Assembly (NCBI GenBank): GCA_951406725.2
Contig: OX597821.1
Coordinates: 91,574,001 to 91,638,000 of the forward strand
DNA: 64,000 nt
Reading direction: 5' to 3'
Source of the DNA: Octopus vulgaris
Lineage: Eukaryota
A model generated the notes under the pieces. That model did not search any database. It saw nothing but the letters and a program-made list of their open reading frames with translations, and was not told where the DNA came from. A program made the position numbers and the translations under genes. Below, piece by piece: positions 14,353 to 53,637 of this stretch. The stretch's first letter is position 1. Each line of letters opens with the position of its first letter.

Positions 14353-15254
14353 AAAGAGTATACAATGAGCTTCTTCTAGTTTCTGTCTACCAAATCTACT
14401 CACAAGGCTTTAGTCAGCTCAAAGTTATAGTAGAAGACACCTGCCCAATGTGCCATATAGTGGGATTGAACCCAGAACAGTACTTAATTGGTACTTTTTT
14501 TTATCAACTCTAAAAGGATGACTCGAACTCAGAATGTAAAGACAGATGAAATGTCACTAAGCATTTTGCCCAGCATGTTGACAATGCTGTCAGCTTTCCC
14601 ACCTTATAACTTGAAATAATAATGCAGTTACTAATCGGTTAGGTTAGCTAGGTTAAGAAAAGAGTAAATAAAAAGGGTGCAATTTCAGAAAGGGACAAAT
14701 TATTGTAGAAGTATTATAAACAAGGGTTCAAATGCAATTATAAGCAGTGGAGATGATAGAAGTCAGTGAAGTCACTGAAGTGATTGTAATGTTTAGATAT
14801 TGTTGTTCTTGTAGGTTTATTTCCATCTTAGTTCTGATCAAGCACATTTATTATAAGAAAGGTATTCTAACCTCCCCCATCTTGTCTTCTTTTTTGTTCT
14901 GTATTTTTTGTGTTTGTTTGTTTTTTTTCAGAAATAATGTATTTTGATTTACATTATCCCATATATCCATAATTTTTTTTTTATAGTATGTTTGGTTGTG
15001 ATTTGAAGGAGGTTCAATATGTTTCTATATCTGGCAGGTCAAGCAGTAGCATGTGGTTCTATTGTTGTCTTGTGAAAAATGTGGAAATTAATTCACAGAT
15101 TAATTTGTCATCTTTGTGCAGAAACCATTCTTATAATCTTATCCTTACCATTCCAATTTTAGAATATCTACTGCTGAAGCTTAAAGATTTGTATAGAATT
15201 AGTCAAGAGGAGATATACATTCAGCACACATTTATAGGAACTCAAAATATTTTT

Positions 15255-51771: not shown

Positions 51772-52060
51772 TCACCGTGATCGTCCAGGCTATCAGGTGT
51801 TGATACACATCGCTGGTCACAATGTGCTTCATATTGTTTTAGCCTTCAAATGACGCCACCCCACTGGCTAAGCGAGCAGGCCAACAGAAGAAAGAGTGAG
51901 AGAAAGTTGTGCCGAAAGAGTACTGCAGGGATCACCACCACTCCCTGCCGGAGCCTCGTGGAGCTTTAGGTGTTTTCGCTCAATAAACACTCACAAGGCA
52001 CAGTCTGAGAATCGAAACTGCGAGCCCGCTGCCCTAACCACTGGGCCATTGCACCTTCAC
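51772..52060 (-). mobile_element. SINE-C, tail type 2
   Basis: Homologous to 25400-25685. Confidence 0.8.
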
Positions 52061-52157
52061 ACACACACACATATAGTTAATAAAAAACATATATCAGAAA
52101 AGAAGTATACTCTGTAAAATAGAGTAGTAATTGCTACAACAAAATTTTATATCTTCG

Positions 52158-52226
52158 ACATAGAGTCACCCAAGGTTTCGTATCCACAAAGCCAAAACCT
52201 TGTGGACGGCTCATCAGACTCTATAT
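52158..52226 (-). ncRNA. Type I hammerhead ribozyme motif (near-canonical, cleavage triplet GUG)
   Basis: Minus: ATATAGAGT-CTGATGA-G(CCG)TCCACAAGG(TTTTGG)CTTTGTGGA(TA)C-GAAA-CC(TTG)GG-T-G-ACTCTATGT. Confidence 0.75.
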
Positions 52227-52484
52227 TCATATATACATACATATATACATGTATATGTGCATATAAATATTTATATATATATATATATGTGCATGTATGT
52301 ATGAATGTATGTATATAGGTATGTTGGTGTAAACAGGAAAAATAGAACTCAAAATATAAGAATATGTTTATTTTTATTAATATTTAGCTAAATATTAATA
52401 AATATATGTATGTGTGAGTGTGTGTGTTTATATATACATACCTATAATATATCTACAAATATAATATGTGGCAATTAGATGGTT

Positions 52485-52555
52485 GTCATAATAAAACTCA
52501 GAGTTTCGGATGCCGGGGTTGAAGTCTACTTCGGCATCTCATCTGTTATTAAGAC
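52485..52555 (-). ncRNA. Type I hammerhead ribozyme motif (core CAGAUGA)
   Basis: Minus: GTCTTAATAA-CAGATGA-GATGCCG(...)CGGCATCC-GAAA-CTC(T)GAG-T-T-TTATTATGAC; stem I 9/10 pairs. Confidence 0.65.
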
Positions 52556-53637
52556 CCATATTATTATTATTAATACATATAATATATATATATATATTTA
52601 TGTGTATAGTGTGTATATAAGTGCATGTATATATATATATATACATACAAACATACACAAATATATGTATACACACACACACACACACACATATATAAGT
52701 GTATGTATATAATATTACTAAACTCTTTATCTTGGTCACTCTCAAAACCTTATTTGATTACTGTTACGAGCTGTAGTTTGTAGTTTCTTTGACAGAATTT
52801 ATTAGTTTAAGAAAGTTCAGCGAAATCATTATAGCTGCAGAGGATGTACCAAAAATAAATCGAGAATATTTTTTTTTCCTTTCTGTTAATGAAATTCCTC
52901 CCAGAATATAAGTCTGGAAATAGTGACATTATACACTGATGCATATAGCTATTGGTGGTGACCACAGACCATTCCATGGCAGGAATCATTTAAACTTTGA
53001 CTGATACAACTCTCTTGAGACAGAAGGCAGTCTGCAGTTTGTGTGACTGTACCGGTGTATATGTCTGTAGCAGTAATCTTGATATGTGTCATGCACACTT
53101 GCAGAATAATTCGCAGAATCAATTTGCAAGAAAATAATTTGCCCAGGTAATAAGAATAAACAGCAACAAATATTATAAAGCAGAAAACAATGATTGGGAA
53201 AAAAATAATAATAAAAACAGTGTATACTAAGAGATTAAAGATGTAATGAAATATATAAGGTCTGTGTATGGTTACCTTAGTGTGCCATATGTACATTTAT
53301 ATATATATTTTATATTTTCTCTTATACTTGTTCCTGTCATTATACTGCAGCCATGCTGGGGCACTGCCTTGAAGAATTATTTTTGTATGCATTTTTTATG
53401 TATGTATTTTCTATGTATGCATCAATGTAATTACACATGTGCTGTTGGCAATTTCTTTTCTGGTGAAGAACTATACTTGAAACGTCAAACTCTCTTTTCA
53501 CCAAGCATCAAGCTGATATATTTCTTGTGCATGTCCTCTTGTTTGTTAATTTTACTAATTTTACTAATACACACACACACATGTATATATATACCACCAC
53601 AGATACACTTAATTAATAATAATTTAATAATAATTGA

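What the first reader, a model, noticed from the sequence alone, without database searches (positions are those of the whole stretch)
52158..52226. Near-canonical type I hammerhead ribozyme, isolated in low-complexity DNA
Seen: exact CUGAUGA and GAAA, 9-bp stem I, 9-bp stem II plus closing G-C, 3-bp stem III with a 3-nt loop. The only defect is G at position 17 (GUG). Established: the NUH rule disfavours G17. Inference: a genuine hammerhead, one substitution from active, with no attached ORF.
Basis: partly seen in the sequence, partly recalled or inferred. Interest (0 to 1): 0.75.

Follow-up and report, generated by a model that had tools for sequence, protein, structure and literature searches.

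The report
Dead hammerhead ribozyme in retrotransposon fragment
The motif is a real hammerhead ribozyme sequence, but it is an old, broken, 5'-truncated copy of the 3' end of a Penelope-like retrotransposon that occurs many times in this genome, so it is an ordinary genomic fossil and not an isolated or new ribozyme.

Summary
On the minus strand, 52226->52158, there is a type I hammerhead: 9-bp helix I, CUGAUGA, long helix II, GAA, 3-bp helix III, G at position 17 (base 52167). Chance is excluded (0 of 300 shuffles). It is not isolated. It is one copy of a dispersed repeat: at least 82 copies in the window's 2.8-Gb genome, none for a reversed control. Across them position 17 is A 54, C 19, U 4, G 5, so the family carries a cleavable GUA/GUC site and the window's G is a private A->G change, which also pairs with C3 (P = 0.99). 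Copies are variably 5'-truncated and end in (TA)n. Long copies carry a degenerate RT-endonuclease frame and direct or inverted repeats. An intact 717-aa sister frame has the motifs that define the 'Hydra' clade of Penelope-like elements (RWK, DKT, CxCX5C, CxxC, CxH), and a close homologue folds like telomerase RT. Sister families keep the core while helix I changes by compensatory substitutions. The window fragment (about 156 nt, about 89% identical to the family majority, no coding remnant) is a dead solo copy. Hammerheads in Penelope-like elements, mostly seen as solo truncated copies, are already described. Rfam's models miss this architecture. Low interest.

The parts
52158..52226 (-). Whole hammerhead-type motif (type I topology, helix I open), decayed copy
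   Evidence: Sequence reading; 89.2 bits, E 2.8e-19 to the family covariance model R1, the only hit in the window; only descriptor hit in the window, 0/300 shuffles
52218..52226 (-). Helix I, 5' strand AUAUAGAGU
   Evidence: Pairs with 52158-52166; 86.8% of cells paired across 63 distinct copies; 7 of 9 pairs show changes on both sides somewhere in the set
52211..52217 (-). Core C3-U4-G5-A6-U7-G8-A9
   Evidence: Exact CUGAUGA; most paralogues read CUGACGA at the free position 7, so a CpG->TpG change here
52180..52210 (-). Helix II hairpin: G10.1-C11.1, CC/A internal loop, 11 bp, UUUG loop
   Evidence: helix 90.5% paired across copies; long helix II with an unpaired base at its 5' end is the published PLE hammerhead trait (PMC4209133)
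52177..52179 (-). Core G12-A13-A14
   Evidence: Sequence reading; invariant in the seed alignment
52168..52176 (-). Helix III hairpin ACC-UUG-GGU (A15.1-U16.1 closing pair)
   Evidence: 95.1% paired across copies; loop is UUG, UUU or AUU by subfamily
52167..52167 (-). Position 17 = G (C on the + strand): the cleavage-site nucleotide, non-permissive here
   Evidence: Family census A 54, C 19, U 4, G 5 of 82; P(C3:G17 pair) = 0.994 against 0.0 in A17/C17 paralogues
52158..52166 (-). Helix I, 3' strand ACUCUAUGU
   Evidence: As for the 5' strand
52071..52157 (-). Rest of the retrotransposon 3' end downstream of the ribozyme (long-tail form), ending at a (GT)n/(TA)n repeat
   Evidence: BLAST to paralogue L013 covers 52225->52086 at 83.6%; alignment to the family majority 89%; the end at ~52071 is read from the family 3' consensus
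52227..52458 (.). TA/CA-rich microsatellite between the two retrotransposon fragments (probable insertion target)
   Evidence: Sequence; only spurious microsatellite 'miRNA' hits below threshold; (TA)n is the reported target of Hydra-clade PLEs (PMC8557442)
52489..52551 (-). Second, separate hammerhead-type motif from a different PLE family (B type): UAAUAA-CAGAUGA-G-AUGCCG..CGGCAU-C-C-GAA-ACUCUGAGU-U-UUAUUA, with U4->A
   Evidence: 75% identical to the 3' end of the young family; near-identical to L034:2234-2302, which has a canonical CUGAUGA

Best explanation
The motif is the hammerhead ribozyme of a Penelope-like retrotransposon (PLE), most probably of the 'Hydra' clade, preserved in a dead copy. 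In the source element the ribozyme sits in the 3' untranslated region. It lies about 1.0-1.2 kb downstream of the RT part of a single RT-endonuclease frame, about 25 nt before a first 3' end and about 95-130 nt before a second (tail) 3' end. Because PLEs insert as partial tandems, this region becomes the pseudo-LTR. [Inferred from hammerhead chemistry and PLE literature, not shown here:] in a transcript the three helices fold around the CUGANGA/GAA core and the chain is cut 3' of A17 (C17 in the sister family). The published hypothesis is that this trims read-through or tandem transcripts, and in vitro work on another PLE found cleavage dispensable for insertion. [Shown here:] the window copy arose by target-primed reverse transcription into a (TA)n/(CA)n microsatellite and was 5'-truncated exactly at the 'TATA' that starts helix I. 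It has since drifted about 11% from the family majority. One of those changes is A17->G, which violates the NUH rule and locks C3 into an extended helix I. The copy has no promoter, no coding part and no partner ribozyme of its own family, so it most likely does nothing.
For: - Repeat family: >=41 paralogues at 86-92% identity on many chromosomes; 82 pattern hits against 0 for the reversed control.
- Position 17: H in 77/82 copies; in the 30-copy alignment G occurs only in the window copy, L021 and L028.
- Retroelement hallmarks: 5' ends spread from -1318 to -1, and 3' ends run into (TA)n in two classes. Long copies share 1.4 kb, and L038 has a second copy of the 3' segment 2.8 kb upstream.
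- Coding capacity: the RT-like frame has >10,000 candidate relatives, many in tandem at 2.59 kb or head-to-head, with open frames up to 717-720 aa.
- Hydra-clade motifs: RWK, DKT, CxCX5C, CxxC...E and N...CxH in the 717-aa frame are invariant or nearly invariant in 26-32 homologues and match the published definition (PMC8557442). RWK, DKT and CxCX5C are also readable in the decayed family-A frames.
- Fold: AlphaFold model of homologue P0003 (49% identical to the 717-aa frame) has pLDDT 88.9 and its best PDB matches are telomerase TERT.
- Structure conservation: family D keeps the core with three compensatory pair changes in helix I and one in helix II, at the same distance from its RT. Overall 86.8% of cells are paired against 30-50% when partners are slid, and 16/25 pairs change on both sides against 9.1+-1.9 in shuffles.
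- Inactivation: C3:G17 pairing probability 0.994.
- Window: no PLE coding remnant.
- Literature: HHRs lie in PLE pLTRs and most genomic motifs are solo copies of truncated PLEs (PMC4209133); canonical HHRs are universal in the Hydra clade and (TA)n is the target (PMC8557442).
Against: - No Rfam hammerhead model matches the window copy or intact paralogues of types A, C or B, even at E<=10 on 106-nt slices.
- Pfam and PDB sequence searches find neither RT nor GIY-YIG in the frames.
- The fold search of the C-terminal module is not significant (best E 2.9; Hpy188I only at rank 15, TM 0.30). The endonuclease assignment therefore rests on motifs read by eye and on the published description.
- No phylogeny with reference PLEs was made.
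- Helix I has no internal loop for the loop-loop contacts that fast natural hammerheads use, so even intact copies may cleave poorly.
- The covariation counts come from an alignment fitted to the model, and the loci were gathered by similarity to the motif or to the RT, which biases conservation upward.
- No cleavage or expression data exist here.
Confidence: 0.9

Rival explanations
1. A free-standing or domesticated hammerhead (for example an intronic regulatory ribozyme) that is active or only one step from active at this locus.
For: All core nucleotides but one are canonical and the three helices are intact. Three of the four differences from the family majority inside the motif are at tolerated positions.
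Against: It is one of >=82 dispersed copies. Its divergence (~11%) is typical of the other decayed copies. G17 is non-permissive and pairs with C3. It is embedded in microsatellite with no family-specific upstream sequence. There is no evidence of locus-specific conservation.
Confidence: 0.03
2. A short non-autonomous hammerhead element (metazoan retrozyme or SINE-like, giving small circular RNAs) and not a truncated autonomous PLE. The two hammerhead-type motifs ~330 nt apart in the same orientation would be its two ribozymes.
For: Two hammerhead-type motifs lie at 52226-52158 and 52551-52489 on the same strand. 19 of 30 sampled copies retain <100 nt upstream of the ribozyme, and 5 of 30 start exactly at helix I.
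Against: The two motifs belong to different families: R1 does not match the second, and the second is 75% identical to the young family's 3' end. The DNA between them is microsatellite, not a conserved unit. 5' ends of the family are spread continuously up to >1.3 kb, and the long copies run into the RT-EN frame. No unit-length tandem of the A motif was seen.
Confidence: 0.05
3. Chance resemblance, or a generic inverted-repeat structure in low-complexity DNA with no hammerhead ancestry.
For: CUGAUGA...GAAA alone occurs 6 times in the window against 1.8 expected. No Rfam hammerhead hit.
Against: 0 of 300 shuffles give a full-descriptor hit. The family keeps every core nucleotide, prefers H17, and sister families covary. 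The position relative to a PLE frame is as published.
Confidence: 0.01

Closest known systems
Hammerhead ribozymes of Penelope-like elements (Cervera & de la Pena 2014, PMC4209133), including those of the Hydra clade (Craig et al. 2021, PMC8557442)
   Same: Type I topology; location in the 3'/pseudo-LTR region of an RT + C-terminal endonuclease element; longer-than-usual helix II with an unpaired base near its 5' end; no clear loop 1; thousands of dispersed copies, most of them solo motifs from truncated elements; (TA)n targets.
   Different: Helix III here is a real 3-bp stem with a non-palindromic 3-nt loop, unlike the 1-2 bp/palindromic-loop 'min-HHR' thought to act as a dimer. Helix I is long (9 bp against 4-5). 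Helix II is very long (12-13 pairs with a bulge). The window copy carries G17.
Rfam RF00163 Hammerhead_1 (type I hammerheads such as those of Schistosoma and amphibian satellites)
   Same: Same catalytic core, same order of helices, same open helix I.
   Different: The model (45 positions) does not score the window copy or intact paralogues at E<=10. The genome's true RF00163 hits (L031-L036) are other sequences with a 4-bp helix II and short helix III. No loop-loop tertiary motif is recognisable here.
Retrozymes / hammerhead-bearing small circular RNAs of metazoans
   Same: Type I hammerheads carried by retroelement-derived repeats. I recall from the literature, without checking it here, that PLE machinery has been proposed to mobilise metazoan retrozymes.
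   Different: No paired identical ribozymes flanking a unit, no tandem units; copies grade continuously into a coding PLE.

Membership tests
Hammerhead ribozyme (type I) | Conserved core C3 U4 G5 A6 N7 G8 A9 ... G12 A13 A14 | tested here: met
   CUGAUGA at 52217-52211 and GAA at 52179-52177; retained in most of the 63 distinct family copies, with scattered decay substitutions
Hammerhead ribozyme (type I) | G10.1-C11.1 and A15.1-U16.1 pairs flanking the core | tested here: met
   G52210-C52180 and A52176-U52168; A-U at 15.1/16.1 in 59 of 60 scored copies
Hammerhead ribozyme (type I) | Cleavage-site nucleotide 17 is H (A, C or U), not G | tested here: not met
   Window copy has G (52167). The family does meet it: A 54, C 19, U 4, G 5 of 82
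Hammerhead ribozyme (type I) | Three helices supported by compensatory change among relatives | tested here: met
   86.8% paired against 30-50% slid; 16/25 pairs with two-sided change against 9.1+-1.9 in shuffles; family D helix I UGGGAU/AUCCCA against UAGAGU/ACUCUA. Caveat: the alignment was fitted to the model
Hammerhead ribozyme (type I) | Match to a curated Rfam hammerhead model (RF00163 and clan) | tested here: not met
   No hit at E<=10 for the window copy or for intact paralogues L013, L057, L034
Hammerhead ribozyme (type I) | Helix I / loop II tertiary contacts of fast natural hammerheads | tested here: not met
   Helix I is an uninterrupted 9-bp duplex with no bulge or loop; by reading only
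Hammerhead ribozyme (type I) | Site-specific self-cleavage | not testable with these tools
   Needs in vitro transcription or RNA-end mapping
Penelope-like element, Hydra clade | Reverse transcriptase related to telomerase RT | tested here: met
   Model of homologue P0003 (pLDDT 88.9) has best PDB matches TERT 3du5, 6zd2, 9swn (E 2e-08 to 5e-08), ahead of retron/DRT/LINE-1 RTs; YxDD motif invariant
Penelope-like element, Hydra clade | C-terminal GIY-YIG endonuclease | tested here: inconclusive
   Motifs VY...YIG(L)TE..FK.R...H...E...N read by eye and invariant. The domain model shows a beta-beta-alpha-alpha-beta-alpha order of elements; whether that is the GIY-YIG fold is my recollection, not a tool result. 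No Pfam/PDB sequence hit and no significant fold hit
Penelope-like element, Hydra clade | Clade motifs: RWK present, DKG changed to DKT, linker CxCX5C, CxxC and CxH around the conserved E and N, no CCHH inside the EN core | tested here: met
   KHMRWKAFFF, FSDKTKNLY, CSCRNKELC, CGLCDME, LNTRTELFGSCPH in the 717-aa frame; invariant or nearly invariant columns; definition from PMC8557442 section 11. Absence of CCHH was not examined rigorously
Penelope-like element, Hydra clade | Short element (<3 kb) with a single ORF; partial-tandem (pseudo-LTR) and inverted arrangements | tested here: met
   2151-nt frame; tandem spacing 2.59 kb and head-to-head pairs; second 3' segment 2.8 kb upstream in L038; inverted motif pairs in L043, L046
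Penelope-like element, Hydra clade | Insertion into (TA)n and a hammerhead near the 3' end | tested here: met
   3' ends abut (TA)n in most copies; motif 25-130 nt from the 3' end
Penelope-like element, Hydra clade | Phylogenetic placement with reference Hydra-clade RTs | not tested
   No reference sequences to hand; the paper's supplements are not held; the only named homologue is from the jellyfish Sanderia malayensis
Retrozyme / hammerhead circular RNA element | Two like ribozymes in direct repeats flanking a short non-coding unit | tested here: not met
   The two motifs in the window are of different families and are separated by microsatellite
Hammerhead satellite DNA (newt, schistosome type) | Head-to-tail tandem arrays of the ribozyme unit | tested here: not met
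   Copies are dispersed singly over at least 27 contigs

The most novel reading that the evidence does not exclude
The hammerheads of this genome's Hydra-clade PLEs have a 12-13-pair bulged helix II, a stable non-palindromic helix III and no loop-loop contacts, and Rfam does not see them. They could be a distinct, monomer-active structural subclass. The currently proliferating sister family has C at core position 4 and a G.U pair or extra base next to G12 (L049-L051), yet has hundreds of near-identical copies with intact 717-aa frames. Either that family carries a new active core variant, or it gives natural in vivo evidence that ribozyme cleavage is dispensable for PLE retrotransposition.
Probability: 0.15. 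Interest if true: 0.45.

Novelty: new member of a known kind. Interest (0 to 1): 0.12.

Why it matters
For the finding itself, very little. It is a neutral fossil of a known association (hammerhead ribozymes in Penelope-like retrotransposons), and the 'defect' is ordinary decay.

Two side points have modest practical value:
1. Curated Rfam hammerhead models miss this whole class even when the core is intact. Genome scans that rely on RF00163 will therefore under-count PLE ribozymes in invertebrate genomes.
2. The genome offers a natural series: families with GUA or GUC canonical cores, and a very young family with a deviant core. That series could test the open question of whether the ribozyme does anything for the element.

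Tried and rejected
- **Rfam.** Scans at the gathering threshold on the window and at E<=10 on the neighbourhood, the motif alone and intact paralogues of three types gave no hammerhead family. A 20-locus scan returned only microsatellite 'miRNA' noise and was uninformative.
- **tRNA scan.** ARAGORN found no tRNA in the window.
- **Sequence searches on the frames.** Pfam on decayed and intact frames and on 26 homologues, and PDB sequence or profile searches, found nothing.
- **Fold search of the endonuclease module.** Not significant.
- **Covariation within family A alone.** Rejected as a test: the copies are neutral decay products of one master and were ascertained by similarity to the motif. 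Sister families C and D, found by a 3'-half pattern and by RT similarity, were used for this test.
- **Genome-wide search with covariance model R1.** I did not try to get round this, so copy number, the position-17 census and the end distributions rest and the 66 loci already held.
- **Supplements of PMC8557442.** Not held, so I could not check whether this exact family is already catalogued.
- **Rival readings.** Chance, satellite, retrozyme and domesticated-ribozyme readings were considered and rejected as set out under rivals.

Full report
**1. What is in the sequence**

The motif lies on the minus strand, 52226->52158. Read 5'->3' it is:
- AUAUAGAGU (helix I, 5' strand);
- CUGAUGA (C3-A9);
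- G10.1, an internal loop (CC opposite A), an 11-pair helix with three G.U pairs, a UUUG loop, then C11.1;
- GAA (G12-A14);
- ACC-UUG-GGU (helix III, closed by A15.1-U16.1);
- G at position 17 (window base 52167, C on the + strand);
- ACUCUAUGU (helix I, 3' strand).

In the predicted ensemble that pair has probability 0.994, against 0.0 in natural paralogues with A or C at position 17.

A structural descriptor for the whole motif finds this one site in the window and none in 300 dinucleotide-preserving shuffles. CUGAUGA...GAAA alone is only mildly enriched (6 found, 1.8 expected).

The window is eukaryotic: it is AT-rich, full of microsatellites, and has a U6-like gene. Its assembly is 2.8 Gb in 227 contigs.

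**2. It is one copy of a dispersed repeat**

BLAST of the 86-nt region against the window's own genome gave 41 matches at 86-92% identity on many chromosomes, out of 279 candidates.

A 32-nt pattern across the cleavage site, with N at position 17, gave 82 matches and none for the reversed control. Position 17 is A in 54, C in 19, U in 4 and G in 5. The family therefore carries a cleavable GUA or GUC triplet, and the window's GUG is a rare, private transition.

In the 30-copy alignment the majority reads UAUAGAGU-CUGA(C/U)GA-GCUGUCCACAAGGCUUUGGCUUUGUGGAU(A/G)C-GAA-ACCUU(G/U)GGU-A-ACUCUAUG. Within the motif the window copy differs from the majority at four places, and only A17->G touches a core position:
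- N7 (CpG->TpG);
- the bulge base of helix II;
- a C-G->U.G pair near the loop;
- A17->G.

**3. What the repeat is**

Similarity extends beyond the motif on both sides. Downstream it runs into (TA)n. Upstream it stops at very different points, from -1 to -1318 nt, which is the pattern of 5' truncation during target-primed reverse transcription.

The 3' ends fall in two classes, about 20-30 nt and about 95-130 nt after the motif. This recalls the optional 'tail' and the two reverse-transcription start sites reported for PLEs (PMC11167929). The window copy has the long form.

Two long copies share 1.4 kb, and one has a second copy of the 3' segment 2.8 kb upstream, a pseudo-LTR layout. Between them lie degenerate frames with RT-like and Cys-rich/GIY-like motifs.

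The RT-like frame has more than 10,000 candidate relatives in the genome. These include a very uniform sister family (53% identity) with open frames of up to 717-720 aa, often in tandem at 2.59 kb or head-to-head.

That 717-aa frame and its 26-32 database homologues carry every motif that Craig et al. 2021 give as diagnostic of the 'Hydra' clade of Penelope-like elements:
- RWK;
- DKT in place of DKG;
- a CxCX5C linker;

The other clade traits also fit: an element under 3 kb, a single frame, a C-terminal endonuclease, (TA)n targets and a hammerhead near the 3' end (PMC8557442). RWK, DKT and CxCX5C are also legible in the decayed frames of the window's own family.

Sequence libraries do not see the domains, in keeping with the clade's reported divergence. 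An AlphaFold model of homologue P0003 (49% identical to the 717-aa frame; pLDDT 88.9) matches telomerase catalytic subunits best, as expected of a PLE RT.

The endonuclease module could not be confirmed by fold search, so that assignment rests on motifs. The only named homologue is from a jellyfish.

**4. Is the hammerhead structure conserved among relatives?**

| Family | Found by | Key features |
|---|---|---|
| C | The 3'-half pattern | GUC site; helix II 5' strand changed so that two A-U pairs become G-U; flanks much more diverged than the motif |
| D | RT similarity (60-64%) | Core and A17 kept; helix I UGGGAU/AUCCCA where family A has UAGAGU/ACUCUA (three pairs changed on both sides); one helix II pair C-G->U-A; motif 1.0-1.2 kb from the RT match, as in family A |

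On 63 distinct sequences aligned to model R1:
- 86.8% of cells are paired, against 30-50% when partners are slid;
- 16 of 25 pairs show two-sided change, against 9.1+-1.9 in shuffles;
- no shuffle reached any observed measure.

The alignment was fitted to the model and the copies are related, so these numbers lean towards the structure. The family D changes can, however, be read directly from the sequences.

**5. Why Rfam is silent**

No hammerhead model scores the window copy, nor intact copies of types A, C or B, even on 106-nt slices at E<=10. The same genome does contain RF00163 hits of other architecture. The cause is therefore the architecture (a very long, bulged helix II), not the G17 change. 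Cervera & de la Pena needed special descriptors for PLE hammerheads for similar reasons (PMC4209133).

**6. The window locus**

The family-A fragment spans about 52226->52071. It starts exactly at the 'TATA' of helix I and is about 89% identical to the family majority. The window has no PLE coding remnant.

About 330 nt upstream on the same strand lies a second hammerhead-type motif (52551->52489). It belongs to a different PLE family, with U4 mutated to A. The two are separated by TA/CA microsatellite. Two independent insertions into one microsatellite fit the (TA)n target preference better than a retrozyme-like unit does.

**7. Mechanism and verdict**

Shown here:
- descent from a PLE hammerhead family;
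- truncation and decay of the window copy;
- the private G17 and its predicted pairing with C3.

Inferred from established hammerhead chemistry and the PLE literature:
- intact copies cut 3' of A17 or C17;
- the role may be the trimming of tandem or read-through transcripts, a hypothesis that in vitro work on another PLE did not support as essential.

The window copy most likely has no function. This is a known kind of object, and the finding is ordinary.

Noticed in passing
window 52489-52551 (-), fragment about 52557->52459: A second hammerhead-type motif from another PLE family: 6-bp helix I UAAUAA/UUAUUA, core CAGAUGA (U4->A), 7-bp helix II GAUGCCG/CGGCAUC with one extra C before GAA, near-palindromic helix III ACUCUGAGU, U17. 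A paralogue (L034:2234-2302) has a canonical CUGAUGA. Model R1 does not match the window copy, and Rfam does not match the canonical paralogue L034 (the window copy lay inside the negative scan).
   Followed up: partly
L049:3096-3158, L050:3096-3158, L051:4589-4651 (G000:C14, C20, C11): The very young, abundant sister PLE family has intact 717-aa frames, many copies with identical match scores, and 2.59-kb tandems. Its motif at the hammerhead position has C at core position 4, A at 7, and a G.U pair or an extra base next to G12 (AGAUAA-CCGAAGA-GAUGG...GCAUCU-GAA-ACUCAGAGU-U-UUAUCU). It is either an active core variant or a ribozyme lost without harm to proliferation.
   Followed up: partly
L001-L030 (family A copies), relative to the motif: 3' ends fall in two classes (about +20-30 and about +95-130 nt after the motif, both abutting (TA)n), reminiscent of the PLE 'tail' and dual RT start sites. 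5 of 30 copies start within 4 nt of the 'TATA' that begins helix I, possibly through microhomology with the (TA)n target.
   Followed up: partly
window about 51800-52057 (-): Immediately 3' of the PLE fragment and a (GT)n run lies a tRNA-like head (GGTGCAATGGCCCAGTGGTTAGGGCAGCGGGCTCGCAGTTTCGATTC...) followed by about 200 nt. It looks like a tRNA-derived SINE. ARAGORN and Rfam tRNA do not call it.
   Followed up: no
window 15075-15186 (-): U6 snRNA match only just above threshold (47.7 bits against 44), with several mismatches in conserved stretches and an insertion. Probably a U6 pseudogene or variant copy.
   Followed up: no
L031-L036 (G000:C5, C7, C1, C3, C15): The genome's bona fide RF00163 hits are other hammerheads. 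They include 108-nt forms with a long insertion in helix II and a 2-bp helix III capped by a palindromic GAUC loop, the dimer-type architecture described for metazoan PLEs.
   Followed up: partly
L006:1691-1793 (+), and a weaker one at 2037-2147: A 5S rRNA match (50 bits, above threshold) lies about 120 nt downstream of a family-A copy, with a second weaker 5S match about 350 nt further on.
   Followed up: no
window 52232-52320 and 52590-52710, and many loci: TA/CA microsatellites give many sub-threshold matches to mir-297, mir-466, mir-3149 and similar Rfam families. These are composition artefacts.
   Followed up: no
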